Origin: Isurus oxyrinchus
Taxonomy: Eukaryota
Direction: 5' to 3'
NCBI GenBank assembly: GCA_026770705.1
Contig: JANJGN010000052.1
Span: forward strand, 1,612,001 to 1,676,000
Length of the DNA stretch: 64,000 nt
The notes beneath the pieces are model-generated. The model was not told the DNA's origin, did no database searches, and saw only the letters and a program-made list of their open reading frames with translations. Positions within the stretch are counted from its first letter, which is position 1; each line of letters begins with the position of its first letter. A program made the position numbers and the translations under genes. Of this stretch, positions 951 to 61,442 are shown piece by piece.

Positions 951-952
951 CC

Positions 953-1896: not shown

Positions 1897-1993
1897 TTTC
1901 TCACACGCTTGGAGATGAAGAATCCACTCAGTCCAACACTCAAACAGATTCCAGCTCCAAACAATCCTGCTTTCCATTCATTGGAATCTCGCC
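1897..1993 (-). CDS. Gene A transmembrane exon (R)RDSNEWKAGLFGAGICLSVGLSGFFISKRVRK, uncharged TM
   Basis: tttacag acceptor, gtaagt donor, 97 nt, phase 1 to 2; same size and clear homology to the TM exon at 61346-61442. Confidence 0.85.
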
Positions 1994-4851: not shown

Positions 4852-4984
4852 CTAAAAACAAATAAACATCAATTAAGTTACACTGACTGTGAAGCACTTT
4901 GAAAGACACTGACAATGTGAAAGGTGTGATATCAATATAGGTTCTTTCACCACAAAGCCCATAATCCAGCCAGACACCTCAGTT

Positions 4985-5640
4985 CAGTACTGAGGGTGTG
5001 CTGCACTGTGGGAGGGTCAGTACTGAGGGAGTGCTGCACTGTCAGAGAGTCAGTACTGAGGGAGTACTGCACCATCAGAGATTCAGTACTGAGGGAGTGC
5101 TGTACTGTCGGTGGGTAAGTACTGAGGGAGTGCTGCACTGTCAGAGAGTCAGTAAGGAGGGAGTGCTGCACTGTCAGAGGTTCAGTACATAGGGACTGCT
5201 GCACTGTCTGATGGTCAGTACAGAGGGGTTGTTGCACTGTCGGAGGGTCAGAAATGAGGATGTGCTGCACTCTCAGAAGGTCAGTACTGAGGGGGTGCTG
5301 CACTGTCGAAGAGTCATTACTGAGGGGGTGCTGCACTGTGGGAGGGTCAGTACTGAGGGAGCACTGCACTGTTGAAGGGTCAGTACTGAGTGAGTGCTGC
5401 ACTGTCGAAGGGTCAGTACTGAGGGAGTGCTGCACTGTTAGAGGGTCAGTACAGAGGGAGTGCTGCACTGTCAGAGGGTCAGTACTGAGGGAGCACTGCA
5501 CTGTTGAAGGGTCAGTACTGAGGGAGTGCAGCACTGTCAAAGGGTCAGTACTGAGGGAGTGCTGCACTGTCAGAGGATCAGTACTGAGGGAGTGCTGCAG
5601 TGTTGGAGAGTCAGTATTCAAGGACTGCTGCAGTGTCAGA
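4985..5640. repeat. 33-bp SINE-derived minisatellite (AGTACTGACCCTCTGACAGTGCAGCACTCCCTC family, reverse orientation)
   Basis: About 20 degenerate units; the family recurs nine times in the window. Confidence 0.9.
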
Positions 5641-15920: not shown

Positions 15921-17051
15921 ATATTTTATATATTCATTCTTCCATGGGAAGTGGGCATCACTGGCTAGGCCAGCATTTATGGCCCATCCTTAATTACCTT
16001 GAGAAGGTGGTGGTGAGCTGCCTTCCTGACCCTCTGCACTCCATGTGGTGTAGGTACACCCACAATGCAGTTAGAGAAGGAAGTCCAAGATTTTGACCCT
16101 AGTGGCAGTGAAGGGACGGCGATATATTTCAAAATCAGGATGATGTGTGTCTTGGAGGCGAACTTCCAGGTGGTGGTGTCTGGGCATTTCAATCCCTTGT
16201 GACAATAAATGTAATATTATAGAAAATGCAAAGGCTTCTTGTAATCTATCACAGAATAAACAAGTTGCAGAATTCAGAAAGCACTTTCTGAAATGTCAAC
16301 AAAGTTCAGTGACATCACATTTCTGCTAATTACTATTCGGCCATGTTGGCTGCACGCAGTCAGGCAGTCCCTCGGTTGTGATGTGTCCACACAGCAGTAC
16401 TGGGATGCATCAGCATCAAAGGACATGCTTAGTTGTTGCCGTGCAATGCATTTATTGCGAGGCTGTTGCACACACGCCCTGTCGATGGACCCTCCGAATT
16501 ACCATTCTGAATCGAGGCAAATCAACTTTCCTGCAACAACTTGCATTTATATGGCACACTTAATGTAACAAACTGTCCCCAATCTCTTCAGGGGATTGTC
16601 ACCTACATATAAATCCATCTCAGAGACACATAATGAGGTATTAGGGACAGGTGACAAAAAGCTGATTTCACAAAGCCAGTTAATNNNNNNNNNNNNNNNN
16701 NNNNNNNNNNNNNNNNNNNNNNNNNNNNNNNNNNNNNNNNNNNNNNNNNNNNNNNNNNNNNNNNNNNNNNNNNNNNNNNNNNNNNNNNNNNNNNNNNNNN
16801 NNNNNNNNNNNNNNNNNNNNNNNNNNNNNNNNNNNNNNNNNNNNNNNNNNNNACTGAATCTCTGTCCCCAATGACTCAGCATCAAGTCGTCACTGGGGAA
16901 ACATTTCATTCCAAACCACACCAACCACAGACCCATTCAGTCCCTTCCTCCCTCTCTCCCCCTCTCCCCCAGTGGGTTGTCTCATGTTCCCAAGAATCTT
17001 CATCCCTGCCACCATCCACAAACCTCCTGACCACCTCTGCCTTTTTCACGC

Positions 17052-17300
17052 TCAGTTTCTCTTGAATCTGATCTGTGCGTATTCCGTCTGCTCTTCCCTG
17101 TGGACAGACCCATCACCACTGGGCACCCTGAAGACTTAGGGATTGGCGTAGAGAAGCTCGTCGGGATTGTCAGGGTTCCCATGTCCAGCATCGCCTCCCA
17201 CTGCACATTCAGAGACACCCCGGGGAGCTGGGGTCTCCCCCTCGCTAGTTGTGTCTCTGGTTGTGTTCCGGGGCTCAGTAATCAGCACGTTCTGTTTACC
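17052..17300 (-). pseudogene. Orphan Siglec terminal tail exon with in-frame stop (…LLYANP*VFRVP…TEYAQIRFKRN*)
   Basis: 249-nt paralog of 58791-59039; TAA at 17138-17136 where the 20.1-kb copy has CAA. Confidence 0.85.
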
Positions 17301-17444
17301 CTACAGAGAAATGGAAACAGAAGACATCCTCACATCATTTACTGGCACTGATAGGGTTAAATTATTCTGCAGCCTCGTTAGTATCAGTCGTGGGTCAGTG
17401 GGTTTAACCCTCTCTTACATGTCTTATGAAAGAAAACACCTATG

Positions 17445-17860
17445 GCAGTGCAGTGCTCCCTCAGTACTGACCCTTCGATAGTGCAGCACTTCCTCAATGC
17501 TGACCATCCAACAGTGCAGCACTCCCTCAGTACTGACCCTCCGACAGTGCAGCGCTCCCTCAGTACTGACCCTCCAACAGTGCAGCGCTCCCTCAGTACT
17601 GACCCTCCGACAGTACAGGTCTTCCTCAGTACTGACCCTCTGACAGTGCAGCACACCCTCAGTACTGACCCTCTGACAGTGCAGCACTCCCTCAGTACTG
17701 ACCCTCCAACAGTGCAGCGCTCCCTCAGTACTGACCCTCCGACAGTACAGGTCTTCCTCAGTACTGACCCTCTGACAGTGCAGCACTCCCTCAGTACTGA
17801 CCCTCTGACAGTGCAGCACTCCCTCAGTGCTGACCCTCTGTCAGTCTCGCACTCCCTCGG
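17445..17860. repeat. 33-bp minisatellite
   Basis: Tandem units of the same family. Confidence 0.9.
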
Positions 17861-17987
17861 TAATGGCTCTGGCGAGTGTCGGCTTGGATTCTGCACTCAG
17901 GTGCCTGGTGTGAGGCTCAATAACATGAATCTTGTAATCAGAGAGAGGATGAGAGAGAGAGAGAGAGATGAAGGGTCAGAGACAGAG

Positions 17988-18744
17988 CGTTATGAATCTA
18001 TTAATGTATGTATTGTAATTGGAAATTGTCTTTTTAAACAGAGGTTCAGTCTGTGGGTGTGTGTGTGTGTGTTTTAATTGGATTAAAGCCAGCCGGTCTG
18101 GGTACTTTGATGTATAGTAGTTTTGAGATGTAAACAAAGAGGTAAAGAGGCATATTGCATTTTTAAAAGGAGGATTCAAAGCCTGGGAGTGAATTCTTAA
18201 ACCAATCAATGTTTATATTACTAATAAAATTGATACTATGAAACGGGAATTATAGTTAGAAGAGATGGAGATCAAAGGTCCTGATGATACAATGAGAATT
18301 TACATTCAAAGAGAAGAGCTGGGTATAACTTGAGCAGTTTTGTGTGTGCAGAGCAGAGGCTTGTAACATCAAAGCAGCTGTAAGCCTACACCTGTTAGCA
18401 AAGGAACCAAAGTGAAAGGAACCTCATTTGGAATTTGTGAGGTGAAAATGCTTTGCTTGGAATCTGCTTAAAGTCTATGGGTTGTCTTAGAGGACGTTAG
18501 TTTGGGAATTTGTTAAAAAGTTATGATAGTACTAGCTTGTAGCCATGTGCATATGATTAACTTGTGAAAATTAATAAATGTCTCATGTAGTTTGATATAA
18601 ACTCATCTCGAGAACTGGTGGTCTTATTCCTGAATTTAGAGATGCATCTCAAACATTCCACTGGGAAATATAGGTTATGACAGTTGTTTAAAGTTTCCCT
18701 CTGGGATTTTAAACAACAGCCTTTACCAGTTGCTGTGTCATAAC
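17988..18744. mobile_element. Probable solo LTR
   Basis: Ends CATAACA; absent from the paralogous intron of gene D (~60240); similar to 13428-14255. Confidence 0.6.
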
Positions 18745-18880
18745 AGAGAGACAGCATGATATTGAACCATTGCTGACTCCACAGGTACAAATCAGTGGGT
18801 AACTGGGCAGGGAATCTGTGACATGTGTTGTCTACACACTGAGATTGAAGATTTGGTGTAAGTGTAAACAGTTCCTGTAC

Positions 18881-18962
18881 CTGGTGCTTCACAGAGAGTG
18901 GACTGGGAGTCAAGGCAATGTCACTGGTCCCTGAAACTCTCTCCTCCATCGCTGTCTTTCTC
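18881..18962 (-). CDS. Orphan cytoplasmic exon RKTAMEERVSGTSDIALTPSPLSVKHQ
   Basis: 82 nt, phase 2 to 0, intact splice sites, same peptide as 60386-60467; no TM exon nearby upstream. Confidence 0.65.
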
Positions 18963-19099
18963 CTGTAATAACACAATATCACACTGTGGTTATCATATAG
19001 CAGAGAGTCAGTGTAGCACAGACACAGAGCCCACTGTAATCTTAGACCAACGACTGGGACTGTCTCTTTAAATCAGTTCTATACAAAGCACAGAATCAA

Positions 19100-19550
19100 G
19101 AAGCTTGACACCATCCAGGACAAAGCAGCCCGATTGATCCACACCCCATCCACCACATTAAACATTCACTCCCTCCACCATGAACACACAGAGGCAGCAG
19201 TGTGTGTACCATCTACAAGATGCACTGCAGCAACTCAGCAAGGCTCCTTCGACAGCACCTTCCAAACCCACGACCTCTACCATCTAGAAGGACAAGGGCA
19301 GCAGACACATGGGAACACCACCACCTGGAAGTTCCCCTCCAAGTCACTCACCATCCTGACTTGGAAATATATCATCGTTCCTTCACTGTCACTGGGTCAA
19401 AATCCCGGAACTCCCTCCCTAACAGCACTGTGGGTGTACCTACACCACATGGACTGCAGCGGGTCAAGAAGGCTGATCACCACCACCTTCTCAAGGGCAA
19501 TTAGGGATGGGCATTAATGCTGGCTTCACCAGTGACAGCCACATTTGATG
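19100..19550 (+). mobile_element. LINE 3' fragment
   Basis: Matches 2750-3190 and 56550-57000. Confidence 0.7.
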
Positions 19551-20135
19551 TAAGAATTAAAAATCTCACAGCTCAATGTATTTATTGGGATCCTCCTGCA
19601 CACACGCCCTGTCGAAGGAGCCTTTGTGGTTCCATTGTTAATCAAAGCAGATCAGACTTACTGCAACTACTTGCATTTATATAGCACCTTTAATGTAGCA
19701 AAATGTCCCAAGGCTCATCCGGGAATTGTTAGTCACATCTTCACCTGACTCTGAGGCACATGAGGAGATATAAGGGACAGGAGACCAACAGCTGAGTCAA
19801 CAAAGTCAGTTATTAACGGGCATCTTAAAGGAGGAGCTGGAGATAGAGAATGAGTGACAGACACAGAAAGAAAGACAGAGACAGGGAGAGAGAGAACAAG
19901 AGAGCGAGAGAGAGAGAGAGAGAGACAGAGAGAGACAGTGAATCTCTATCCCCAGTGGCTCAGCATCCAGTCCTCTCTGGAGAAGCATTTCATTCCAAAC
20001 CACACCAACCGCAGCCCAATCCCATCCCTTCCTCCCTCTCTCCCCCTCTCCCCCCGTGGGTTGTTTCCTGTTCCCAGGAATCTCAATCACTACCCCCACC
20101 CCCATACCTCCTCACTCCCTCTCCCCATTTTTCAT

Positions 20136-20384
20136 TCAGTTATGCTCGAACCTGATCTGTGCGTATTCCGTCTCCTGATCCCTGTGGACAGACCCATCAT
20201 CACTGGACATCCTCAATACTTGGGGATTGGCGTAGAGAAGGCCGTTGGGATTGTCGATGTGCCAATGTCCAGCATCGCCTCCCAATGCACCTTCAGAGAG
20301 ACCCCGGGGAGCTGGGGTCTCCCCCTCACTAGTTGTGTCTCTGGTTGTGTTCCGGGCCTCAGTAATCAGCACGTTCTGTTTACC
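20136..20384 (-). CDS. Orphan terminal tail exon: degenerate ITIM (LLYANP), intact ITSM (TEYAQI)
   Basis: Open 249-nt exon with ctctgtag acceptor; paralog of 58791-59039. Confidence 0.65.
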   Translation of the reverse strand, partial: GKQNVLITEARNTTRDTTSEGETPAPRGLSEGALGGDAGHWHIDNPNGLLYANPQVLRMSSDDGSVHRDQETEYAQIRFEHN

Positions 20385-20529
20385 CTACAGAGAAATGGAA
20401 ACAGAAGACATCCTCACATCAATTACTGGCACTGATAGGGTTAAATTATTGTGCAGCCTCGTTAGTGTCAGTCGTGTCTCAGTGGGTTTAACCCTCTCTC
20501 TCATGTCATCTGAAAGAAACCACCTATGG

Positions 20530-21200
20530 CAGTGCAGTGCTCCCTCAGTACTGACCCCCCCGACTGTGCAGCACATCCTCAATAGTGACCCTCTGTCAGT
20601 CTCGCACTCCCTCTGTACAGTGCAGCACTTCCTTAGCACTGACCCTCTGACAGTGCAGCACTCCCTCGGAACTGACCCTCCATCAGTGCAGCGCTCACTC
20701 AGTACTGACCCTCCAACAGTGCAGCACTCCCTTAGCACTGACCCTCTGACAGTGCAGCACTCACTCAGTACTGACCCTCCATCAGTGCAGCACTCCCTTA
20801 GCCCTGACCCTCTGACAGTGCAGCACTCCCTCACTACTGACCCTCCAACAATGCAGCACTGCCTTAGCGCTGACCCTCTGACAGTGCAGCACTCACTCAG
20901 TACTGACCCTCCAACAGTGCAGCACTCCCTTAGCCCTGACCCTCTGACAGTGCAGCACTCCCTCAGTACTGACCCTCCAACAGTGCAGCACTCCCTTTTC
21001 ACTGACCCTCTGACAGTGCAGCACTCCCTCAGTACTGACCCTGCAACAGTGCAGCACTTCCTTAGCACTGACCCTCTGATGGTGCAGTACTCCCACATTA
21101 CTGACCCTCTGACAGTGCAGCACTCACTCAGTACTGACCCCTCCAACATTGCAGCATTCCCTCTGCACTGACCCTCTGACAGTGCAGCACTCCCTCAGTA
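20530..21200. repeat. 33-bp minisatellite
   Basis: Tandem units of the same family. Confidence 0.9.
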
Positions 21201-21422: not shown

Positions 21423-21563
21423 CACTTCCTCATTTTGTCTCACAGTGACACATCAACCCTTTCTAATTAAACACACAGAGGGATCAGCACAGGAAGAGGT
21501 CATTCTGCCCAAGCAGAGCGGGTGGGCAGTTCCTCCCCAGGTGAGCAGTCGGACAGGTCCTGG
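21423..21563 (+). promoter_or_regulatory. Gene B promoter (PU.1 motif CACTTCCTCATTTT 21423-21436) and non-coding first exon (donor GTAAGT at 21564)
   Basis: Inverted copy of 12771-12912. Confidence 0.6.
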
Positions 21564-22013
21564 GTAAGTAACGGAACGATTGGAATTCACTTCCACCACC
21601 AACACCATCCTTTGTTGATGTTGTGACTTTATAAAGACAGATTCCAATGATTGATGCCTTTGAAAGATTTCTACTGATTATTGAGATCTGGGTGTGAGGC
21701 TCAAGTCTGTTGTACAGAACATCTTTCTAGCTCAAGGGATGAGGGAAGAGCAGAGACATGAGCTTTGGGACATCTTGAGGTGGTGAAAGGTGCTATAGAA
21801 ATGCAAACCCTTCATTGTTTTTCTTTGTTAAAGTCTTGTGACTCTCTGCAGAGCACCTATCATCCCACAGATAATCAAATTAGTCTGAGAAAACATTGTC
21901 TAAAAGCAGTTCTGATCTCTCGAGAGCTGTCGGACAATAGGTGAGGTCTCATTAACTCCTTTCTCTTTCACAGCTTGAGAGTCAGAAGTGGATGGAATAT
22001 CTGGGAGTGGACA

Positions 22014-22053
22014 ATGATCGGGAAATCTTACTTCCTCCTGTCACTTCTCCAAG
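22014..22053 (+). CDS. Gene B signal-peptide exon MIGKSYFLLSLLQ(G)
   Basis: Identical peptide to the gene A leader; phase-1 donor gtaat. Confidence 0.9.
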
Positions 22054-23298
22054 GTAATATCATCGTCAGCTCAGACAGATTTATGGCTAATAGTCTTTGT
22101 AAAAGATCATTCTTATTGAGTGTGATTGGGAACCGATTCAGCAGTGAGCCAGTGTACAAACTCACACCAAGTCCCATTCACCCATCACCCCTGTGCTCAC
22201 TGATATACACTGACTCCCTGTCTGACAGCAGAATTGGAGGAGAATAGAGATCTCAGAGGGTTGTAAGAACTGGAGGAGGTTACAGAGATAGGGAGGGGAG
22301 AGGGTGGATTGCGGGTAAGAAATCAATGATGAGAATTTGAAATTTGAGTCATTGCTGGACTGGGAGCCAATGTAGGTCAGCCAGTGACAGGGGAGCGATC
22401 GGCTGAATAGAGAAACAGGGATAAAAACTGGGGAATGAGGTCTATCCTGATGCTAGGACTCGGATAACAATGCCCTGAAATTTTGTGTCATTTGCTGATT
22501 TTAGTCAGAATTTCCCATGAAGACAACACAGCAGCTCCTAGAATAGACAGGCTGTTCAGTGTCACACTTCCTGTCCATTCTCACCATGCTAGATACTTCA
22601 ATAAGGGAGCAAGATAACTGAAAGAGAGAGGAAGGTAAAGCTGTCTGTGTGTAAAACTGTCAAATATTCTGAGTTATCATGATTGTCTCTGACCTGCTGC
22701 AGAGTTTAAAGTTCTCAGAACATTAGCACTTTGCAGCTCAGAGAGAGACCATTGACTCACTGCCTGAAAGGGCGGTGGAAGCAGATTCAACAGGAACTTT
22801 CAGAAGGGGAACTGGATAAATACTTGAAGGGGACATTTTGCAGGGCTGTGGAGGAGAGAGCAGAGGTTAGAGTGGGACTTATTGGACAGAACTTTCAAAG
22901 GTCCAGCACAGGCTCGATGGGCCAAATGACTTCCTTCTCTTCCAGATCATTCTACAATCTGATAAATTAAGCCCCACATCAATAACTCTTAAGGCTCCTG
23001 CTGCAGGGATGGATCTTTGAGAAGGACAGAGAATAAGAGGTTTCTGGTATCATTTTCATATTGTACTGAATCTTGCTGCCAGAATGTTTGGTCACCGCTG
23101 ATCACCATGTTGTGTTTTTATAATGATATAAAGGCACCAGCCACTGATACGGAATTGGGTAAATACATTGTGGGTTCAGTTATTTTGAATAGGGACATGA
23201 GAACAGATGTACAAGGATAGAAAGCTGGGAGACACCTGCAGCCAAACTGTGTGAGCTGTGTTCTGCTCACAGACCAAAGTGAAACTTGGACTGGATGG

Positions 23299-24569
23299 TG
23301 TTATCATCCCAGCTGATGTTACTACTGGGCAAGTCAGATCCCAGGGTGGAACTCAGCTTGATAGGTCCTAACTTATATTTTTTATTTAGGAATGTGGAGT
23401 GCGGCTACTGAACAGAGTCACAGGAGTCATCTGATGAACTTCTAACAAAAGAATAAAACATTTATTAAACTAGGAAAGACAAACTATATGACATTACTCC
23501 TTCACCCAGACCTATACATTTACAGTTTCATAAGGATAACACAATTACAATAACTAACTTATACTCTCATGTTCACACTAAGTACACAGTCGATGTAAAA
23601 CAGTAGACGACCTGGGGTCAGGGACACCACATTCTGAAACCAAGTGACAGAACCCACTTGGAACAAATGCTCCGGGTCCCTCCTCAACTGACTCTAGACG
23701 CTTGTTACACCGTGAGGCAACTGGTCTAACGAAACTGTATCTTTCACATGAGAGTTTCCAATCTCTACTCACCAAGTGCTCTCTTTGGAATCTTCTCCAA
23801 CATGACACTTTCACTCAGAGACCTTCCACAAGGGTCCACTTTCACTATTTCAAACTCTCCTTCCCATGTTCCTGCCCCCTGGATCGCCACGTGCATTCAG
23901 CCTTCCTTCCACGCCCTGTCTGTCCAATGCTCAGCCGTGTCAATGGAACACCATGGCTTCACATGGCCGTAGTAATGAGTCACCAACCTGTGGTGTCTCC
24001 TAGGATCTTCTGGCTTCTCATAAGCCTTTTTTGCTTTGGGTCTGTGTCCTTTTGCCCATTCTCTTTTAGCTTGGATCCCTCCTCTGAACCTCAACCTTAA
24101 CTTGACTTAACAGGACCTTGTCCAGATTCCTGATCTTCCTTGGACGAGAAGGTCTTCTTGGGCCCTTTCTCCTGTTCCACTCGATAGTTTTGGCTTCTTC
24201 TTTACTTTGGGACTGACTATCTGTCCCGCTCCTTTGCTGCTTCTCCTGGCAACTCCTTTCAACAGAACTGAAAGTACTTTTCTGTTTTTCTCGGTCTCTG
24301 TGGGTCCTTCCCTCTGCATCACTGTTGCTAGGCAACAGCACAGTTTCTTACACCTTGTATTTGGTTTGACTTCCCTTCAACAGTCACCAAACCCCATTAG
24401 ATTGCTGGCTTCTATAAAAATGAAACTAAAAGTCAAGTTTCCCCCTTTCTTAACACACAAATACAGAAATCAAACTAAACTTGAACTTAAAGATAGACCT
24501 TATGCCTAACACACACAAATACACATAGAACTTCCTTAACCTATCCCCAGTTCCTAAAATCACATGACA
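23299..24569. mobile_element. LTR-like insertion
   Basis: TG...CA termini; no counterpart seen in the matching intron of gene A. Confidence 0.45.
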
Positions 24570-24623
24570 CACTTCCCCTCGAGTGATGTCATGCTGCTAT
24601 CCCTGAAAGGCATATTACAACAG

Positions 24624-25552
24624 TGTTATCACTTGACAGGTGATGTGTGCCAGGCAGACCAAGTCCATGAGAGAAAGGTGGTCACACGATCATAATGATT
24701 TTGCAATTTGTATTTATTATGAGATGTGTGCACTGAATTCAGAAGCAATAATTACTCTAGGAACTTTAGAGATTTGAAAATTAAATTAAAATACTTGCTC
24801 TCAGAATAAATGATATCATGCATGTACATGACACTACAATTACCATTTTAATAATAATTCTTAAAATTCCGAAATAACCTGACTCCCAGTTACACTCCCT
24901 TTAAGGCAACGGTCCAAAAATAGAGTTTATATTTAAAACAAACCCAGCAAGTTAACACAATATAAAAGCAATACCCTGCACAGAGGAATTCCAAGTGGCT
25001 TTTCCCCAACTTCAGTTCTGTTGGATAGCAGGCTTGTGCACAAATGCTAGTGGTTTCATTAAGACTATATCACACACTCGTGTTAGATCTTACATGGCAT
25101 TCTGACACATAGCCTTTCATTCTCCCTGATAGATATATATTTCTCTCTTTGTAACATGAAAATTCTATTGTTCCAAATGTTTTTGAAACTGTATCTTCCT
25201 CATAACAAATTCTTTTGTGGTGCCCATATTGCCAGGAGCCTTTGAGAAAAATAAGCACATTCCTTAGTCTTGCTTATCTGGCTAGTTGGAAACAAACTAA
25301 GATTCCTTTGAAATCCAACAACCCCTTCATTGAAATAAAAATGCAAATTCTCTTCATACCTTCCATGCTAAGCAGCATCCATGTTTACTCAATAGCATGT
25401 CAAGCACCTAGCTCCTTTTGATCATTTTAAACTTCCAATCTAATTAACTCCAAATGTACTTAAATCACATGCAGACCCATCATGCGTACCCCCATAAACC
25501 TACTTCACAATATACTATAAAATTTTATGAAAATTATTATACTTTCATCACA
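24624..25552. mobile_element. Solo LTR
   Basis: TG...CA termini, 4-bp flanks acag/atag, colinear with 57610-58499. Confidence 0.6.
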
Positions 25553-25943
25553 ATAGGAACCACTGCCTTAGACACTGAGGATCTAGGACAGCTAGGCCAA
25601 TTCATGATTCATGATGGTGATAATGGGGGAATTCTGAAGGCTCCTAATCCATTGTCCTAGTTTGTAAATCAGCAGTGAACTCACTTCAATTAGTGTGTCT
25701 TGTAGACACTGTGTTGGGTGGAAGACTGGCTTCACTAAGCAGGTTCCTGAGGGCCATGAGCCAATGTAGAATGAACTTGTCCACTCCTGTATCCAGGATT
25801 CTCTTCAATGTGTTGTGAAACATTGGGGCATTCATTGTGAGTCCAGACTGCAGCCACTGTGCCCCAGTGATGGAGGGGGTGGATTTTGAGTCTAGTGGAT
25901 TGACAAAACATTCAGAGTTAAATATTGATATTTCTCCCCCTAG

Positions 25944-26309
25944 CTGGACTACCACAAGTGTGGAAAGGTGACACTCCACGAGAGGTGACAGCGCAGGAAG
26001 GTTCGTGTGTACAGATTCCGTGTCATTACAGCTACCCATCATATTTAGTACCGAGATCACCTGTTGGAATCTGGTATATGAGAAGGAATTGGGAAAGATG
26101 GTCTATAGCCTTTCACTCCAAGGATCACAGTCGCAAGTTACCACGGTTCCACCATCGGACCCGGCTTTCTGGAGACCTGAAAGATGGTGACTGTTCGCTG
26201 ATTATAAACAACATCAGACGGGAAGATGCAGGATATTATTTATTCAGAACAGATTTTGACAGCAGGAATAGATACAACGACCGTCCTGAAACCCAGCTTC
26301 ATGTTTCTG
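25944..26309 (+). CDS. Gene B Siglec-type V-set exon 1 (divergent loops)
   Basis: 366 nt, phase 1-1; GSCVQIPC, DCSL, YYLFR. Confidence 0.92.
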
Positions 26310-27189
26310 GTAAGTGCTGTGTTATAATTACTCAACAATTCACATCCAACACTCAATGGGAAATAATAGTGTTTGATTTGCTTGTTTTTTTGCCGTGTTA
26401 ACCAGCGTCACTATTTTTAATGATTTGTCTATTTCTGCTCCCAGATCCATGAGCTTATTGTGTGTGATTGAATCCACATCATAGCTGTAACGTAAACCGA
26501 GCTGAGGGGTGATGACACCTCCCCCCTGAGTAAAGTGTCTCCTCCCCACTACACCTTCCACCCCTCACACTGTCTGTGTAATCTCCCGTCCCATCCCCAG
26601 CCTCTCTTTCCCCTCCAAAGTCCTGCAACGTGTTTCCATCTCCCGAATCCGTTCCCATCTTTCCCGGAACTCCATGTTTGAATCCCTTCAATCAGGTTCC
26701 CACCCCAGCCACTGTGCTGAAACAGCTCTTATTTTTATTGAGCCAATGCCAAGCCCCGATACCGAGCGAGAGCCTCCTCATTTGCTGAGTTTAAGGTGAT
26801 GAGTCAGCCCCTTAGTCCGTAGAGGGGATTCTCCTCGGTAATGTGCAGCCTTGTTTGTGTCTCTCCACAAGCGCATGAGGGATTTGTACAGAGGCTGCAG
26901 CGCTGGAGGGGGTCTGCACAGGGGTCCTGGCCTGTCCTGAGCCAGTTTTAGCAAGGACAACTCTGGCCTTGGCAGCTGAAAGCCAGCCATTGGACAGACG
27001 GGGCCTGTCACAAGGAGCCTGTTAGTCACTCCCCCCCGTGTCTCCTGTGCTCGGATCCAGACCATGTTGGCTGGTGGATCTGGCTCAGGAAGGGTCCTCC
27101 CCATGGGACCCCCCGATGGAAGGTGGGTCGAGCGGGTCATTCACTTGCATGTTTATTCTGCAGCTTTAATATTTTAAGAAGGTAAGAAT

Positions 27190-27920
27190 GTAGGAACATA
27201 AGAAATAGGGACAGGAGCAGGCCATTCGGTCCCTCCAGCCTGCTCTCACTGATCTGGTTGCGGCCTTAACTCCATTTTCCTGCTTGTCCCCCAAACCCTT
27301 GACTCCCTTGTCGATCAAAAACCTGCCTCACTCAGCCTTGAGTCTATTCAATGGCCCAGCCTCCACTGCTCTCTGGGGAAGAGAATTCCACAGGCTAGCG
27401 CCCCTCTGAGAGAGGAAATTCCTCCTCATCTCAGTCTTAAATGGGAGAGCCCTCATTCCGAAACTGTGCTCCCTGGTTCTAGATTCCCCCACGAGGGGGA
27501 AACATCCTCCCAGCATCCACCCTGTCAAGCCCCCTCGGAATCGGATATGTTTCAATAAGCTCACCCCTCATTCTTCTAAACTCCAATGGATACAGGCCCA
27601 ACCTGCTCAACATTTCCTCACAGGACAAACCCTTTAATCCCAGGAATCAGCCCAGTGAAGCTTCTCTGAACTGCCTGTACACAATGATCCTGTTACAATC
27701 TCACTAACACCCTGTGCAGCTGTTGCAAGACTTCCCTCCTTTTATACTCCATCCCTTTGCAATAAAGACCAACATTCCACTTGCCTTCCTCATTCTGTGG
27801 TGTTCCTGAATGCTGACTTTCTGTGATTCATGTACCAGGACACCCAGATCCCTCTGTACTGCATTCTGCAGCCTGTCTCCATTTAAATTATATCCTGTTT
27901 TTCTATTCTTCCTGACAATA
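27190..27920 (-). mobile_element. CR1 LINE 3' fragment
   Basis: FKTEMRRNFLSQRGASLWNSLPQRAVEA and VQRDLGVLVH. Confidence 0.85.
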
Positions 27921-28039
27921 TAATTTGTTGCCATTCTCCTCAGTATTGACCATCCCCCCAATTCAGCCTCATCTGTAAATATTGGGTTCAGTGGATCCAC
28001 AAACCATCCAGAGATAAATATTGAGATTTCTCTCCCCAG

Positions 28040-28405
28040 CTGAACCCTCGCAAGAGTGGAAAGGTGACAATCCACGACAGGTGACAGTGCAGGAAGGTTC
28101 CTGTGTACAGATTCCATGTCATTACAGTTATCCATCGTGTCTGGAAAACCAACCGCGAGGTGGAGTCTGGTTTAATAATGAGGAATGGAGAACATCGTCT
28201 ATAGCCTTTCACTCCAAGGATCACAGTCACGAGTTACCACGGTTCCACCATTGGACCCGGCTGTCTGGAGACCTGAAAGATGGCGACTGTTCCCTGATTA
28301 TAAACAACATCAGACGGGAAGATGCGGGTCCTTATTTTTTCAGAATAGAATTTGACAATGGTCCGAGCCATAACTATTACCCTGTAACCCAGCTTCACGT
28401 TTCTG
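28040..28405 (+). CDS. Gene B Siglec-type V-set exon 2
   Basis: 366 nt, phase 1-1; GSCVQIPC, extra Cys in PSCL, DCSL, YFFR. Confidence 0.92.
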
Positions 28406-29133
28406 GTAAGTGCTGTGTTATAATTACTCAACAATTCACATTCAACACTCAATGGGAAATAACACAAACTGTGACATTTACATATTAACACAAAACACAG
28501 CTTATTATAACACACTGTCTGATTCTCAATAACCTGGTGATAGCTTCCAATTCACTCCTAAAGCAACCTCTAATACTCACTTTAATATCAATGATTAAAT
28601 GTATTGACTGTGTCCATCAATGTTATCAGGTTATCCACTCCTATCGATCTCTCTAATCCTGTCTCGAAGTCTGACTTAGCGACAGAAGAAAGATTCACAT
28701 TTCTGTAGCACCTTTCACCACCTCAGCATGGACCAAATCACTTCACAGCCAATGAGCTGATTCCTGAATTGTAGTTACTATTGTAATGTGGGAAACACAG
28801 CAACCAATTTGCATACAGCAAGCTCCCACAAATTGCAAAGTAAAAAATGGCCCAGATCGCTGAGGGACTGATGGGTTAGTGCACTCCAAACTCTGGTCTG
28901 CTCCACCACCCTCACCCACTATTATCAGTTCAAGTGTCTCGGAGTGAACGTGTATTAAGCTGAGAGACAGAAACACCAAAGTCTCAAAGCAGGAAATTCT
29001 CTCCTAATCATTGTAACCTCTCAGATCTGATATCATCCTTGTAAACGTGCTTTTTCTTGTGGGACTGTGATTTCTATTTGAACTGATGCTTCACGTTATA
29101 TTTCTCTAAAAGGATCCATTCTCTGTCTGTTAG

Positions 29134-29430
29134 ATTTCACAGATAAACCCACGATATTCCCTGCTGAAATTATTGCAGGAAAGCCTGTGGATGTAAGCTG
29201 CACCTTCAACACAACGTGCAATGGAACAGCAGCACCTGTCTTAACCTGGGACACTCCCACTGACGTACCTGGATCAGTCTCAAACACTGTAACTCAGCAT
29301 GGTGTCACTCTGACCTATACTTCTGTTCTGACCCTGATCCCATCACTCCAACACCACAGACACACTCTCAGCTGCAGAGTGAGATATCCATCTGTTTCAT
29401 CGGAGCGGACCCTCGTACTAACTGTGCAAG
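29134..29430 (+). CDS. Gene B Siglec domain-2-type C2 exon
   Basis: 297 nt, phase 1-1, near-identical to 5762-6058. Confidence 0.9.
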
Positions 29431-29753
29431 GTAATTACATACACCTTTCATTCTACATCAGCACTCCCTCAGTGCTGACCCTCTGACAGTGCAGCCCGTT
29501 CTCAGTGTCCACATTCTCAGGCCACTCAAAGTGCTTCACAGTCGATAGAAGTTAACTGATCTTTATTTGATTGTTGCTGAATGAAGAGACAAGCTGTCTA
29601 AACTTTACATCTCACACACATTATTTTCCATGGCAACACCTCCTCCAATCAGAGACCACTTGCTGATTAACCAACACTCTCTTCCCTTTAAATATAAATT
29701 GTTGTTCACTTTCTGTTGGTAAACCTGCAATCTGTCTTGTTGAGTCCGGTCCT

Positions 29754-29905
29754 GACATCTGAATATCACAATGAACAGAACAAGTTCCAACAATGAGCTG
29801 TGGTTGGTGATTCCTCACGTTACATCCAGGGATACTGGAGACTATCAGTGTGCTCAGAGAATGAACATGGAGCAGTGGAGGGGTTCATAACCATCACTGT
29901 GGAAC
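29754..29905 (+). pseudogene. Dead C2 exon of gene B (5' half missing, 1-nt frameshift)
   Basis: Matches the 3' half of the 282-nt C2 exon; TGTGCTCAGAG versus intact TGTGTGGCAGAG. Confidence 0.85.
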
Positions 29906-31019
29906 GTTAGTTAAGACAAACTTCAACATCTCTCTCAGATTGAAACACTACAGAAACACACATAAATATCCAGCCTTAAATAGACACCTGCAGACACACA
30001 ATCCCACATCTATGAGCACACACAAAGACACACTCACAAACAAACACACTAGCACATACTCCCCTGTGGATTACCTGACCTCCCTCAGTGCTGCACCGGA
30101 GAGTTGACCTGGATTCTGGGATTTGTGTTCCCTTTCATATTTATGGAAGAATATGGAAATTGCAAAGTCTATTACAGACACTCAGATGCACAGAGATACT
30201 CACAGATACTCTCTGCCTCTCCAACTCTCTATCCTCCTTTAAGAACCTTCCTGAAATCTAACTCTTTGACCAGTCACCAGTCCCAATTCCTCCTTACGTG
30301 ATTTTGTGTGAAATTTTGTTTGAGTATCTGAGAGTAAGAGGGAAGTGGAGAGGTTTAGGAAGGGAATTCCTGTTGCTGAAAAGCTTACATCAAGTTCTCA
30401 GCTTTCCAGTGCCCATTTTTCACATGATGTCCATGTTCATAATGGGGATTGCCTATGTAAACGTCACGCTGTAGTTACACTCTCCCACCAGTGGTAGCAC
30501 GGTAACACTTAACCCTTGCATCTCCAAGCTTTTCAAGCAATTTCACTTCCTAATTTCCTACTATTCACCTCAACCATTCCCTGTGGGAGTGAGTTCCATA
30601 TTCTCCCCTCTCTCTGGGTAAAGATTGGAACTGTTTATTAAGCGGGGGGTGTAAGTCCGTGGGGGAGTCCATCCCGATACTGCCCGATTCGCACACACGG
30701 CTGAGATGGATTTTCACCCGGCACTAAAGGTTTCCAGAATTTTCTACAGCACAATCCTGTACACAGCGATGGAGAGAAACATTGGACAGGGAGTCCAACA
30801 GCACAATGATCCATTCTCACCAATGTTCCACGCTAAGGGGAAAGTTCCGATTGTCCACTCTTAGAGTGTTTACAATGAAAACATTCATTCCACATTGAAT
30901 CCCAGTGGATGGGTCAATATTACAGCAAATGTTGCAGTGATATGAAGCTTGATTGTTCAGCCAGAGTGAGAGATTGAAAGCGGAGAGTCAGTGATGATTT
31001 CTTTCTGTGTGTTCTCTAG

Positions 31020-31159
31020 ACAGTGGAGGAGAGATTCTGCACGTGATCCTGATCCTGGGAATACGAGCTGTGATATTCCTTGTGGCTGTGGTTATCACTA
31101 TCACTGGAGTCTGTGTCTGGGAGAGACAAACAGTGAAAGGAAGTCGACAGACTGTTTGA
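31020..31159 (+). CDS. Gene B terminal TM exon (D)SGGEILHVILILGIRAVIFLVAVVITITGVCVWERQTVKGSRQTV*, Arg in TM, activating type
   Basis: Pyrimidine tract ttctttctgtgtgttctctag; phase 1 matches the upstream donor; long hydrophobic stretch; stop at 31157-31159. Not in the ORF track. Confidence 0.8.
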
Positions 31160-31542
31160 AGCTTTGTACAGCAACAATCTGGTCAGTCAGTGCGGACAAA
31201 TAACGTGTGATGTTGTGTTAAGTTGTAATGAAACTGGTCAGTGTCCTGGTTATAATCATCTCCGTATCATCGAATCATTCCTGCAATGGAGGAGGACATT
31301 TGGCCCATTGAGTCTATGCTGTCTCTCTGTAAAGCAATCCACTCAGTCCCATCCCCTGCTCTATCCCCGTATCCCTGCAAATTTATTTCCAATTTCCGTC
31401 CAATTTCCTTTTGAAATTGTTCATCGAATAGGAATGAACAGAAATGTGACGTTGCTAAACTCTGTTCTCTGATTGGAATGTGCTTTCTGAATGCTGCACC
31501 TTTTTCATGCTGCGATAGATTGTAAGAAGCATTTGGCTTATG

Positions 31543-31548
31543 AATAAA
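31543..31548 (+). terminator. Candidate polyadenylation signal AATAAA for gene B
   Basis: About 385 nt after the stop; ATTAAA follows at ~31571. Confidence 0.4.
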
Positions 31549-31889
31549 ATTACATTGATTAACTCAAGTGATTAAAATGCTCAACCTGTTCTGTAGATAT
31601 TTAAAGATTAAAATTCTTGTTTTGCTGCAAAATACTTGGCTCAAAGACATAGCTTCCTGTTGTCACGTTTTCCAATCAGATGAATTCCTCTGTCCATCTT
31701 TATAATAGAAATTTCCAATGTAAACATGTCACATTGTAACTGCACACTCTTGCCAGTGGCTGGTGTGATACCAAAGCTGTCTTGCTGCAGAGAAACAGCG
31801 AGAAATATTCCTGTTGTGTGCATGAACTTCATGTTAGCATGAGACACAGGCATCAGATGAAATTTTGTGCAATTTGTACAATGTTCTTT

Positions 31890-32375
31890 AGACAGTGCAG
31901 CACTCCCTCAGATCAGACCCTCCGACAATGCAGCACTCCCTCAGTTCAAACCCTCCGACAGTGCAGCACTCCCTCAGTTCAGACCCTCCGACTGTGCAGC
32001 ACTCCCTCAGTTCAAACCCTCCGACAGTGCAGCACTCCCTCAGTTCAGACCCTCTGACAGTGCAGCTCTCCCTCATTTCAGACCCTCTGACAGTGCAGCA
32101 CTCCCTCAGTTCAGAGCCTCCGACAGTGCAGCACTCCCTCAGTTCAGACCCTCCGACAGTGCAGCACTCCTTCAGTTCAGACCCTCCGACAGTGCAGCAC
32201 TCCCTCAGTTCAAACCATCCGACAGTGCAGCACTTCCTCAGTTCAAGCCCTCCGACAGTGCAGCTCTCCCTCAGTTCATACCCTCCGACAGTGCAGCACT
32301 CCCTCAGTACTGAACCTCCGACAGTGCAGCACTCCCTCAGTACTGAACCTCCGACAGTGCAGCACCCCCTCAGTT
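31890..32375. repeat. 33-bp minisatellite, variant unit (…CTCAGTTCAGACCC…)
   Basis: Tandem units. Confidence 0.9.
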
Positions 32376-33499
32376 CTTCTCTGCCGATGCTGCCAGACCA
32401 GCTGAGTTTTTCCAGGTATTTCTGTTTCTGTTTCTGTTTTGGATTTCCAGCATCCGCAGTTTTTTTGCTTTTAGTGCTGGGCAGTTCCTCATCAAGGATT
32501 CGGGCCACAAAACATTGCGAGTGCTGTGGGTCTGCGCCACGATTTAGAGAGCTGTGCTTGGCATGCCTATTCTAGTCCCAGTCCAGTGTGGTGGGGACAG
32601 CCTGGCAGTCCTGGGTTGGTGGTGCCCAGCATGGTGTGCAGGACGTGGTCAGTCCCTCACACACGTCCATCCTGGGGGTGGGTGGCTTGATACTAGGCCG
32701 CAGGTGGCACAATCCCAGTCAGGGGAGGCATCTGCAGCCTGTCAGTGGGGAGCAGGTAATATAGAGAGTAGGGGTGGGGGTGGGAATCGAGGGGGGCCGG
32801 TGGTCTCTGTAAGTCACAGTACAATGGGCCTCTAGTTGGAGAGAGGTCAGGTCTACATGGGGCATTGGGATGTCAACATCAGACAGTCTAGGGAGGAGGA
32901 CTGGGATGTCAACCCCGAACACAATAAGATCAAGGATTAGAGAGGAAGGGAGGAGACTGATTGGAAGAAGGGGAATGTGCACATTATGCTCCTCCAGCAC
33001 GATGGGAGGGACTGTGATGGTTACGGGGGTTGGGGGGGGTGAAGTGGGAGGGGATAGAAGCTTACCTGGTGGTATTGCCTCAGCCCCACCCTTTTTCAAG
33101 CTGATCCAATGTCGCAGTTGAAGAATAAGCTACAAAACAAATTGGCAGGGGAGGTCTCCCAGGGCCTGTGGGAGACATCACCCACTGCACTCGTAGGCCT
33201 GTTTGAAGGGGCACCCGAACAATTCCGGCTTTTCCAAATGATGAGGAAGACACAGCTGCACCCCGAGTCCCCTACTGGGGATCCAGACGGTTGCAATAGC
33301 GCTGCGAGGGACTCATGGGCTCCACAGTGACTCCCTAATTAGCGACTGGAAGGTTTATGTTCATTTATCTTTATTATCCGTTCATATTGAGCAATGGAGC
33401 TCCTGATTTGTCACCTTTCTGTACCTCGTCCAATGCTTCTGTTATCAGGACTTCCACATCGATGTGAAAGAGCCATGATGATAGCAGACAGTCGCACAA

Positions 33500-38599: not shown

Positions 38600-39010
38600 G
38601 ACTCTCTGACAATGCAGCACACCCTCAGTACTGACCCTCCGACAATGCAGCACTCCCTCAAAACTCACCCTCCGAGAATGCAGCACTCCCTCAAGAGTGA
38701 CTCTCTGAGAATGCAGCACAACTTCAGTACTAACCCTCCAAGAGTGCAGCACTCCTTCAAGACTGACCCTCTGACAGTGCAGCACTCCTTCAAGACTGAC
38801 CCTCTAACAGTGCAGCACACCCTCAGTACTGACCCTCTGACAGTGCAGCACACCCTCAGTACTGACCCTCTGACAGTGCAGCACTCCCTCAGTACTGACC
38901 CTCTGACAGTGCAGCACTCCCTCAGTACTGACACTCTGACAGTGCAGCACTCCCTCTGTACTGACCCTCTGACAGTGCAGCACTCCCTCAGTACTGACCC
39001 TCTGACAGCT
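38600..39010. repeat. 33-bp minisatellite
   Basis: Tandem units. Confidence 0.9.
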
Positions 39011-58600: not shown

Positions 58601-58790
58601 TATTAACAGATGTTAAATTATACATAATTCATAAGCTTCTCACAATCTTTTACAGCATGGAAAAAGGTGCAGCATTCAGAAAGCTCAGTTAAAACCAATA
58701 AAAAAAAGTTGAGCAACATCATATTTGTGTTCATTACTATTTGGCCATGTTGGCTGCACACACCCCACAGCCCCGCTCCCTGTTTCACAC

Positions 58791-60175: not shown

Positions 60176-60385
60176 AGGTGCCTTGTCATTATTGTGTTCA
60201 GGTTTCTGGTCAAAGAGCGAGTGATGGAGGGAGAGAGGGGGAGGGAGCGAGAGACAGTGCTACCTACTGAGCCATTGCTGACTCCACAGGTAGATATCTG
60301 TGGGTAACCTGGCTGGGAATCTGGGACATGTGTTGTCTACACACTGAGATTGAAACTTTGGAGTGTGTGTAAACAGCTCCTGTAC

Positions 60386-61345: not shown

Positions 61346-61442
61346 TTTCTCACACAGATGAAGATGAAGATTCCAGCCAGGAAAACACTCAACATGATCC
61401 CAGCCGTGAATAATCCTACTGTCCATTTACTGGAGTCTCTAC
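61346..61442 (-). CDS. Gene D transmembrane exon (C)RDSSKWTVGLFTAGIMLSVFLAGIFIFICVRK
   Basis: 97 nt, phase 1 to 2, tttacag/gtaagt, uncharged hydrophobic helix. Confidence 0.9.

What the first reader, a model, noticed from the sequence alone, without database searches (positions are those of the whole stretch)
31020..31159. Hidden activating-type TM exon with intramembrane Arg
Missed by the ORF track. Read in phase 1 from a strong acceptor it gives ILHVILILGI-R-AVIFLVAVVITITGVCVW, then ERQTVKGSRQTV*. The Arg codon is 31064-31066, and a His lies earlier in the helix. It shows no evident similarity to the 97-nt TM exons of A and D, so it appears to be a separate module rather than a point-mutated inhibitory TM. 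An Arg in the N-terminal half of a TM is typical of FcRgamma/CD3zeta-coupled receptors (LILRA, NKp46), while Siglec-14 uses Arg with DAP12, so the adaptor is open.
Basis: partly seen in the sequence, partly recalled or inferred. Interest (0 to 1): 0.85.

Follow-up and report, generated by a model that had tools for sequence, protein, structure and literature searches.

The report
Shark Siglec activating-type membrane-anchor exon
This 140-base stretch is a real, spliced last exon that gives a shark Siglec-type immune receptor a membrane anchor with a buried arginine and almost no tail, which is the usual mark of an "accelerator" receptor that signals through a helper chain. The same anchor is already predicted in gene models of at least eight shark species, although I found no paper describing it.

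Summary
Positions 31020-31159 (+) follow a pyrimidine tract and an AG. Read in phase 1 they give SGGEILHVILILGIRAVIFLVAVVITITGVCVWERQTVKGSRQTV*, with Arg at 31064-66.

- **Splicing.** Contigs from two independent studies carry the exact GT..AG junction 29430|31020. One 850-nt contig spans the C2 exon, this exon and the 3'UTR.
- **Gene.** The gene is leader, V, V, C2, TM (402 codons). Both V domains are Siglec-type and keep the canonical sialic-acid-binding Arg.
- **Conservation.** The cassette forms the C-terminus of 15 annotated proteins from 8 shark species in three orders (best E = 3e-13). The motif ILGIRA-IF is invariant in all 16 sequences, and the predicted VQ-D-SGGE junction is reproduced.
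- **Separate module.** The exon shows no similarity to the 97-nt uncharged TM exons of the neighbouring paralogues. A decayed C2' exon lies in the intron upstream of it.
- **Not tested.** Adaptor coupling and adaptor identity are inferred only. The "helix His" is Asp or Ser in other sharks, so it is probably a boundary residue.

Verdict: a confirmed activating-type Siglec terminal exon, one more member of a kind this scan has already found elsewhere in this genome and that NCBI gene models already predict, though I found no paper on it. Interest is moderate.

The parts
22014..22053 (+). Leader (signal-peptide) exon, MIGKSYFLLSLLQ, ending in phase 1 with a GT donor
   Evidence: Read. It was located with a 30-nt loose end that lies upstream of the V1 acceptor in run X3, which matches with 3 mismatches. 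The leader is 13/13 identical to that of S. canicula P0014.
25944..26309 (+). V1 exon: Siglec-type V-set domain, phase 1-1
   Evidence: Pfam V-set 5.7e-14 and Ig_CD22 2.6e-9. The best solved relative is sialoadhesin at 1e-15, with the ligand-binding Arg aligned (YLFR). Splice sites were read.
28040..28405 (+). V2 exon: Siglec-type V-set domain, phase 1-1
   Evidence: Pfam V-set 8.3e-11 and Ig_CD22 2.2e-10. The best solved relative is Siglec-5 at 7e-14, with YFFR aligned to the essential Arg. The junction 28405|29134 is seen in all 4 runs.
29134..29430 (+). C2-set exon, phase 1-1; its donor is the one used for the TM exon
   Evidence: Pfam C2-set_2 1e-8. It is 96% identical to the C2 domain of Carcharodon P0012. 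The donor G|GTAATT was read.
29754..29907 (+). Decayed remnant (3' half) of a membrane-proximal C2' exon, lying in the intron; not coding
   Evidence: It is 93-95% identical at nucleotide level to intact exon copies at 4722-4568, 3387-3212, 63503-63349 and 62412-62254. It carries an in-frame TGA at 29753-55 and a 1-nt deletion near 29853, and its 5' half has diverged. The RNA junction skips it.
31000..31019 (+). Polypyrimidine tract and AG acceptor
   Evidence: Sequence read. The joint with GT..AG ends is reported.
31020..31159 (+). Terminal coding exon (140 nt): short stalk SGGE, TM helix with Arg, 12-residue Tyr-less tail, stop at 31157-59
31064..31066 (+). CGA codon for the intramembrane Arg, inside the invariant ILGIRA-IF motif
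   Evidence: Invariant in 16 of 16 sequences.
31160..31595 (+). Probable 3'UTR, with AATAAA at 31543 and ATTAAA at 31571
   Evidence: Poly(A) signals were found. The X5 contig (record 30) ends at 31595. Contigs cannot prove an RNA end, so the limit is approximate. In some contigs 31182-31423 is replaced by 218 other letters.
1897..1993 (-). Comparator: 97-nt uncharged TM exon of the head-to-head paralogue (gene A)
   Evidence: A loose end behind 29906 in run X2 reads the start of this exon, which fits a paralogue's C2' exon spliced to it.
61346..61442 (-). Comparator: 97-nt uncharged TM exon of a second paralogue (gene D)
   Evidence: Loose ends behind 29907 in runs X1-X3 read the start of this exon.

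Best explanation
Positions 31020-31159 are the last coding exon of an intact, transcribed Siglec-type receptor gene on the + strand.

**Gene model.** Leader 22014-22053, V1 25944-26309, V2 28040-28405, C2 29134-29430, TM/tail 31020-31159. That makes 402 codons.

**What the exon encodes.** A four-residue stalk, a hydrophobic helix with a buried arginine set in the invariant motif ILGIRA-IF, and a 12-residue cytoplasmic tail without tyrosine.

**Proposed mechanism (inferred).** With no signalling motif of its own, the receptor most likely pairs its membrane Arg with the membrane Asp of an ITAM (or YxxM) adaptor dimer: DAP12-like, FcR-gamma or CD3-zeta. It would need that adaptor for stable surface expression and would deliver an activating signal when its sialic-acid-binding V domains are engaged.

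**Context.** The gene sits head-to-head with a paralogue (gene A). Gene A has 82-95% identical ectodomain exons, two extra C2' domains, an uncharged 97-nt TM exon and a Tyr-bearing tail. The pair therefore has the layout of an activating/inhibitory receptor pair.

**Origin.** The activating copy arose by loss of the C2'/TM/tail exons and use of a separate 140-nt cassette, not by mutation of the old TM.

**Shown:** the exon, its splicing, the architecture, the conservation of the Arg, and the independence from the 97-nt TM exons.
**Inferred:** adaptor coupling, the activating sign of the signal, and sialic-acid binding.
For: **Sequence and frame:**

**Splicing:**
- The junction 29430|31020 (GT..AG) is found in X1-X3 (one sample) and in X5 (another study).
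- X5 record 30 (850 nt) covers 29133-29428, 31018-31181 and 31424-31595.
- The V2|C2 junction is seen in all four runs.

**Conservation:**
- phmmer against 1.84e9 proteins gives 9 hits, the best at 3e-13. Eight carry the cassette, each at its C-terminus. Seven further proteins with the cassette came from cluster and word-index searches.
- Carcharodon P0012 has the same V-V-C2-TM layout. Its C2 is 96% identical and its TM 93% identical, and it has the same VQ-D-SGGE junction.
- Arg, and the whole ILGIRA-IF motif, are invariant in 16/16 sequences. The residues on the Arg face of the helix (I11, L12, I18, F19, T26, G29) are invariant or nearly so.

**Tail:** ERQTVKGSRQTV contains no Tyr.

**Siglec identity:** Pfam Ig_CD22 and V-set match both V exons. 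The best solved relatives are Siglec-5, Siglec-8, CD33 and sialoadhesin, with the essential Arg aligned.

**Separate module:** no similarity to the 97-nt TM exons, and no other copy in the window.

**Rearrangement:** a pseudo-exon remnant lies in the intron.

**Mammalian paradigm:** activating CD33-related Siglecs lack ITIMs and use a charged TM residue to bind DAP12 (PMC8198044).
Against: - No adaptor binding, surface-expression or signalling test was possible.
- The runs are only guessed to be RNA and are held as contigs. The contigs are 95-99% alike to the window, with three fixed differences in the C2 exon. The junction could therefore come from an allele or a near-identical paralogue rather than this exact copy.
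- The leader-V1 and V1-V2 junctions were seen only with paralogue-like flanking letters (tables 5c and 7). Inclusion of V1 in the same mRNA is inferred.
- I could not inspect the Arg codon base by base in the reads, because only the best-supported differences are listed.
- The gene A tail was checked only superficially.
Confidence: 0.72

Rival explanations
1. The exon is real, but the product is a tail-less, non-signalling form (a decoy or ligand sink). The Arg would serve only as a quality-control or retention signal, or be tolerated without a partner.
For: The tail has no signalling motif. No adaptor interaction has been shown. The hydrophobic stretch is long (29 residues), which could let the Arg sit nearer the interface.
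Against: The Arg and its eight flanking residues are the most conserved part of the cassette, across three shark orders and several ectodomain types. That fits a protein-protein contact inside the membrane better than a passive anchor. A conserved helical face is aligned with the Arg.
Confidence: 0.15
2. The Arg couples to a non-ITAM partner, for example a DAP10-like YxxM adaptor or another membrane protein. The output would then be co-stimulatory (PI3K-type) or of another kind, not classically activating.
For: The sequence alone cannot name the partner. The tail ends in -RQTV, which looks like a class I PDZ ligand and hints at other interactions.
Against: Nothing specific supports this over an ITAM adaptor. 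The -QTV ending is missing from the orectolobiform, SLAM-like and multi-V gene models.
Confidence: 0.1
3. A chance ORF in an intron or 3' region that is not part of any mRNA, or an inhibitory TM exon that merely acquired a point mutation to Arg.
For: The ORF is short (46 codons) and sits at the threshold of ORF listing.
Against: The exact spliced junction is seen in two studies. Homologues reach E = 3e-13, each at the C-terminus of an annotated protein. There is no similarity to the 97-nt TM exons, while those two align strongly to each other.
Confidence: 0.02

Closest known systems
Primate Siglec-14 (paired with Siglec-5) and Siglec-16 (paired with Siglec-11)
   Same: A Siglec ectodomain very similar to that of a neighbouring inhibitory-type gene. 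A TM with a basic residue. A short tail without ITIM. An identity step along the gene pair (82-85% at leader/V1, 94-95% at V2/C2) recalls the gene conversion described for Siglec-5/14. The mammalian paradigm is taken from PMC8198044 and my own knowledge.
   Different: The pair arose independently in a shark lineage. The architecture has two tandem V domains. The TM cassette is unrelated in sequence to the paralogue's TM and is shared with other receptor types. The adaptor is unknown (DAP12 in mammals).
Annotated shark gene models, e.g. [quoted passage not shown]
   Same: The same cassette at 82-93% identity. The same VQ-D-SGGE junction. P0012 has the same V-V-C2-TM layout, with the C2 domain 96% identical.
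   Different: These are automatic predictions in other genomes or paralogues. None is identical to the window's product, and none was found described in a paper.
KIR2DL4 and macaque activating KIR (TM Arg at position 4, FcR-gamma) versus human activating KIR (TM Lys at position 9, DAP12)
   Same: An adaptor-coupled IgSF receptor with a basic TM residue. In macaques the activating form was likewise made by recombining a foreign TM region onto an inhibitory-type ectodomain (PMC8102735).
   Different: The shark Arg lies about 8 residues after the polar boundary (His/Asp7), or 11 after Glu4. Its residue type matches the FcR-gamma class and its depth matches the DAP12 class, so the rule gives no clear answer.
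Siglec-15 (TM Lys, DAP12/DAP10; conserved across vertebrates)
   Same: A Siglec with a basic TM residue in non-mammalian vertebrates (own knowledge). The window's V domains match the solved Siglec-15 structure 7zoz only weakly (8e-7 and 4e-6).
   Different: The window's V domains are much closer to Siglec-5, Siglec-8, CD33 and sialoadhesin (1e-13 to 1e-15). The residue is Arg, not Lys. The gene is a member of a lineage-specific expanded cluster.

Membership tests
Siglec family (sialic-acid-binding Ig-like lectins) | N-terminal V-set domain of the Siglec/CD22 type | tested here: met
   Pfam Ig_CD22 (PF24518) and V-set score above their curated cut-offs for both V exons. The top solved relatives are Siglec-5, Siglec-8, CD33, Siglec-7, sialoadhesin and MAG.
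Siglec family (sialic-acid-binding Ig-like lectins) | Conserved Arg on strand F that binds the sialic-acid carboxylate | tested here: met
   V2 GPYFFRIE aligns to Siglec-5 GSYFFRVE. V1 GYYLFRTD aligns to sialoadhesin GTYNFRFE.
Siglec family (sialic-acid-binding Ig-like lectins) | Actual binding of sialylated glycans | not testable with these tools
   Needs glycan-array or cell-binding assays with Fc fusions.
Adaptor-coupled activating IgSF receptors (Siglec-14/16, activating KIR, LILRA, NKp46 type) | Basic residue buried in the TM helix | tested here: met
   Arg15 of the exon lies inside a 29-residue hydrophobic stretch with a Kyte-Doolittle score of 2.93. It is invariant in 16/16 sequences.
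Adaptor-coupled activating IgSF receptors (Siglec-14/16, activating KIR, LILRA, NKp46 type) | Short cytoplasmic tail without ITIM, ITSM or any Tyr motif | tested here: met
   The tail is ERQTVKGSRQTV followed by the stop. It has 12 residues and no Tyr.
Adaptor-coupled activating IgSF receptors (Siglec-14/16, activating KIR, LILRA, NKp46 type) | Physical association with an Asp-bearing ITAM adaptor, and adaptor-dependent surface expression | not testable with these tools
A scan note (s1-863553) reports an FcR-gamma gene in this genome; I did not check it.
Paired activating/inhibitory receptors | Neighbouring gene with a closely similar ectodomain but an uncharged TM and an inhibitory tail | tested here: inconclusive
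   Gene A (minus strand) has V2 90% and C2 94% identical at protein level and an uncharged 97-nt TM exon. Loose ends in the contigs fit use of that exon in RNA. Downstream ORFs hold YxN and TxYxxI-like motifs, but I did not build or verify the tail exons or an ITIM. Part of the tail lies at or beyond the window edge.
CD33-related Siglec subfamily (orthology with mammalian CD33rSiglecs) | Phylogenetic grouping with mammalian CD33-related Siglecs rather than Siglec-1, -2, -4 or -15 | not tested
   Only best-hit lists are available. V2 is nearest Siglec-5, Siglec-8 and CD33, while V1 is nearest sialoadhesin and MAG. No tree was built. The NCBI names (Siglec-12, -13, -14, CD33-like) are automatic labels.

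The most novel reading that the evidence does not exclude
The 140-nt Arg cassette is a shark-wide, portable "activating module". It has been grafted by exon shuffling or gene conversion onto several IgSF receptor types: V-type Siglecs, V-less CD22-like proteins, single-V sialoadhesin-like proteins, and in a diverged form SLAM-like proteins. It is kept alike within each shark order.

On this reading, sharks built paired activating/inhibitory Siglecs independently of mammals, more than 200 million years ago. All these receptors would feed one conserved adaptor through the ILGIRA-IF contact face.
Probability: 0.45. Interest if true: 0.6.

Novelty: new member of a known kind. Interest (0 to 1): 0.4.

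Why it matters
Paired "brake and accelerator" Siglecs are described in papers for mammals. The reviews and searches available here returned no paper on shark Siglecs. This locus gives a clean, expressed example in a cartilaginous fish, and it shows how the activating copy was made: the membrane-proximal Ig, TM and tail exons were lost (a decayed exon is still visible) and a separate Arg-bearing terminal exon was used instead.

The strict conservation of ILGIRA-IF across three shark orders defines a concrete membrane contact motif. That motif can be used to find the shark adaptor and to count activating receptors in elasmobranch genomes.

The value is limited. The same cassette is already present in automatic gene models of eight species. 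This scan has already reported sister cases in the same genome. The functional claim remains inferred.

Tried and rejected
- **Other copies in the window.** tblastn and blastn found no second copy of the TM exon. The cassette is single-copy here.
- **Relation to the 97-nt TM exons.** Protein and DNA alignments score no better than shuffled sequence. The "mutated inhibitory TM" idea is rejected.
- **Remnants of the old 3' end.** I looked for the old TM and tail downstream of 31160 on the + strand and found none. There were only satellite and repeat hits.
- **Pfam and solved structures for the TM exon.** No match (at E<=10), as expected for a TM peptide.
- **The window's own protein.** Word-index searches with the C-terminal regions of P0002, P0001 and P0012 did not return it. 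Those searches saw only 7-8 candidates each, so this says little.
- **Carcharodon locus.** I could not compare exon and intron conservation or synteny.
- **Adaptors in sharks, from the literature.**
  - PMC4016189 (2014) states that the FcR-gamma chain was not found in cartilaginous fish. A scan note (s1-863553) says this genome has such a gene. I could not test either statement.
  - PMC11372145 shows cd247 (CD3-zeta) expressed in bamboo shark T cells.
  - Searches for tyrobp or fcer1g in sharks gave nothing useful.
- **Reads.** Only one read-laying run was allowed, so I could not re-lay the Arg codon or the V1-V2 junction.

Full report
**1. The observation**

Positions 31000-31019 read tctttctgtgtgttctctag, a pyrimidine tract ending in AG. 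From 31020 the sequence, read with its first two bases completing a split codon, gives SGGEILHVILILGIRAVIFLVAVVITITGVCVWERQTVKGSRQTV and then TGA at 31157-59.

The stretch Ile5 to Trp33 has 29 residues. Only His7, Arg15, Thr26 and Thr28 are polar. Its best 21-residue Kyte-Doolittle mean is 2.93. In the six-frame translation of the window, only (GT)n-type low-complexity runs reach that value. The ORF listing reports the frame as a 50-aa ORF from a GTG at 31007, so it is at the listing threshold rather than invisible.

**2. The gene it belongs to**

All exons lie on the + strand, and all junctions are phase 1.

| Exon | Coordinates | Notes |
|---|---|---|
| Leader | 22014-22053 | MIGKSYFLLSLLQ, GT donor |
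| V1 | 25944-26309 | Siglec-type V-set |
| V2 | 28040-28405 | Siglec-type V-set |
| C2 | 29134-29430 | ends G\|GTAATT |
| TM/tail | 31020-31159 | stop at 31157-59 |

The G at 29430 plus AC at 31020-21 gives Asp, so the junction reads TVQ-D-SGGE and the whole model has 402 codons.

- Pfam gives V-set plus Ig_CD22 for both V exons and C2-set_2 for the third exon.
- V2 is nearest to human Siglec-5 (7e-14), Siglec-8 and CD33, with GPYFFRIE aligned to GSYFFRVE.
- V1 is nearest to sialoadhesin (1e-15), with the essential Arg aligned.

Each exon was searched by reference.

**3. Is the exon used?**

I searched the run index with 31020-31640. I then laid four runs on 25651-31650. X1-X3 come from one sample and X5 from another study.

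- All four runs hold a joint that skips 1589 bases with GT..AG ends. It is equivalent to 29430|31020.
- All four also hold the V2|C2 joint 28405|29134.
- In X5 a single 850-nt contig lies on 29133-29428, 31018-31181 and 31424-31595. That is C2, then the TM exon, then the 3'UTR, ending about 20 nt after ATTAAA at 31571.
- Summed contig depth over the TM exon is 30-60 times that of the intron bins at 30251-30450. The tool warns that depth from contigs cannot rank anything.

Caveats:
- The runs are only guessed to be RNA, although spliced contigs show that cDNA is present.
- They are contigs, 95-99% alike to the window, with three consistent differences in the C2 exon. The junction belongs to this gene, an allele, or a near-identical copy.
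- The leader|V1 and V1|V2 joints appear only with paralogue-like letters (tables 5c and 7). Inclusion of V1 is therefore inferred. Two things support it: there is a single leader in the locus, and S. torazame models have the same AEPSQEW start following another V domain.

**4. Conservation**

phmmer with the 45 residues against 1.84 billion representatives gave nine hits at E<=1e-3, the best at 3e-13. Eight of them carry the cassette at their extreme C-terminus. The ninth (P0008) lacks the motif. Seven further proteins with the cassette came from cluster and word-index searches.

In all, 15 annotated proteins carry the cassette. They come from Carcharodon carcharias, Scyliorhinus torazame, S. 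canicula, Mustelus asterias, Chiloscyllium punctatum, Hemiscyllium ocellatum and Rhincodon typus. With the window's own species that makes eight species, provided the window is not itself Carcharodon.

- Anchored on the motif, the alignment is gapless.
- L6, the run I11-L-G-I-R-A16, I18-F19, V23, G29, C31 and V32 are invariant in 16/16 sequences.
- Thr26 is nearly invariant.
- I11, L12, I18, F19, T26 and G29 fall on the same helical face as the Arg.

The closest relatives are the great white shark models P0012 and P0013 (TM 93%, C2 93-96%) and P0015 (TM 89%, C2 93%, V2 90%). P0012 has the same V-V-C2-TM layout and the same VQ-D-SGGE junction. The window therefore comes from a lamniform shark or from a paralogue in that species.

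It is better read as the polar outer boundary of the helix.

**5. A separate module**

- The uncharged TM exons of the paralogues lie at 1993-1897 and 61442-61346 on the minus strand, and each is 97 nt.
- They align strongly to each other (score 85 against 19.5 ± 4.2 for shuffles).
- The Arg exon aligns to neither above shuffles (p = 0.28 and 0.12 for protein; 0.18 and 0.68 for DNA).
- The cassette has no other copy in the window.
- In other sharks it follows different ectodomains: V plus C2 plus four I-set domains (P0003), four C2-type domains without a Siglec V (P0005), a single Siglec V (P0006), and Ig_3-only SLAM-like proteins (P0007, P0009).

Over the 29-residue helix, cassettes of Siglec-like and CD22-like proteins group by shark order. 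Identity is 25-29/29 within an order and 20-24/29 between orders. The SLAM-like cassettes form their own group. This points to shuffling or homogenisation within lineages, but such short sequences cannot prove it.

**6. How the activating copy arose**

The + gene and gene A (minus strand; leader near 12309, V exons at 8842 and 6817, C2 at 6005-5763) are an inverted duplication.

| Region | Nucleotide identity |
|---|---|
| Leader | 85% |
| V1 | 82% |
| V2 | 95% |
| C2 | 94% |

Gene A goes on with two C2' exons (ending at 4568 and 3212) and the 97-nt TM exon. In the + gene only the 3' half of one C2' exon remains, at 29754-29907. It has an in-frame TGA at 29753-55, a 1-nt deletion near 29853 and a diverged 5' half. 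The RNA junction skips it.

No remnant of the old TM or tail lies downstream of 31160 on the + strand. The activating form was therefore made by loss of the C2'/TM/tail exons and use of the Arg cassette.

Loose ends behind 29906/29907 read the starts of the uncharged TM exons of A and D. This fits contigs of the paralogues' own C2' exons spliced to those TM exons.

**7. Mechanism and adaptor**

The tail has no Tyr, so signalling has to come from a partner. In mammals, activating CD33-related Siglecs lack ITIMs and use a charged TM residue to bind DAP12 (PMC8198044). Among KIRs, Lys at TM position 9 goes with DAP12 and Arg at position 4 with FcR-gamma (PMC8102735).

Here the Arg is residue 8 after the His/Asp boundary, or residue 11 after Glu4. 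If a 21-23-residue core is instead counted back from Trp33, the Arg is at position 3-5. The residue type suggests FcR-gamma and the depth from the outer boundary suggests DAP12, so the sequence does not decide.

On whether sharks have these adaptors:
- A 2014 survey reported no FcR-gamma in cartilaginous fish (PMC4016189).
- A follow-up note of this scan (s1-863553) reports a transcribed FcR-gamma gene in this genome. I did not test that.
- CD3-zeta is expressed in bamboo shark T cells (PMC11372145).

Adaptor coupling and the activating sign of the signal are inferences. I put them at about 0.7.

**8. Novelty**

The kind (an Arg-TM, tail-less partner of an inhibitory Siglec) is well known from mammals. 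The cassette is already in NCBI gene models of several sharks. This scan has already followed up sister cases in this genome (s1-300793 and several "paired Siglec" clusters). I found no paper on shark Siglecs. I therefore file it as a new member of a known kind, of moderate interest.

Noticed in passing
29754-29907 (+): Decayed 3' half of a membrane-proximal C2' exon inside the intron. It is 93-95% identical to intact copies at 4722-4568, 3387-3212, 63503-63349 and 62412-62254, but has an in-frame TGA (29753-55) and a 1-nt deletion near 29853.
   Followed up: yes
21500-29462 (+) versus 12834-5730 (-): Nucleotide identity between the + gene and the head-to-head gene A steps from 82-85% (leader, V1) to 94-95% (V2, C2 and flanking intron). 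This looks like a gene-conversion tract or a mosaic of different ages.
   Followed up: partly
31182-31423 (+): In contigs of X5 and X2 this part of the 3'UTR is replaced by 218 other letters and the match resumes at 31424. Contigs of X1 and X3 are collinear with the window. The skipped ends are GT..CA, so it is not a canonical intron. It is probably an allele or a paralogue UTR variant.
   Followed up: no
31145-31156 (+): The tail ends in -RQTV, which fits a class I PDZ-ligand pattern. The ending is kept in Carcharodon and S. torazame models, and S. canicula ends -RRTV. It is absent from the orectolobiform, SLAM-like and S. torazame multi-V (P0011) models, which end earlier.
   Followed up: partly
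31110-31112 (+): Cys31 of the exon (in GVCVW), near the inner leaflet, is invariant in all 16 cassettes. It is a candidate palmitoylation site.
   Followed up: no
28180-28200 (+) versus about 6660 (-): The V2 domains of the + gene and of gene A differ mainly in the C-C' loop: EEWRTSS against EKQIPWAP, with a 3-residue length difference. The framework is 90% identical.
   Followed up: no
31891-32376 (+) and at least 8 other places (e.g. 4980-5640, 17440-17865, 20520-21200, 38600-39008, 59470-60170): A 33-bp satellite (14.7 copies here, 92% matches) recurs throughout the window on both strands and yields long spurious ORFs.
   Followed up: partly
45368-45162 (-): Another, distant Siglec-like V-set exon (29% identical to V2; SCVVIPCSFDFPSH...), belonging to a different gene.
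   Followed up: no
17034-20503: Copies of the region downstream of the D-type TM exon (87-92% identical to 58772-60571) lie between the two divergent leaders.
   Followed up: no
1-1896 (-): Downstream of the uncharged TM exon of gene A, ORFs carry YxN motifs (CYINEN, VYENC) and a TxYxxI-like motif (TVYDYI). The exon structure of the tail was not worked out.
   Followed up: partly
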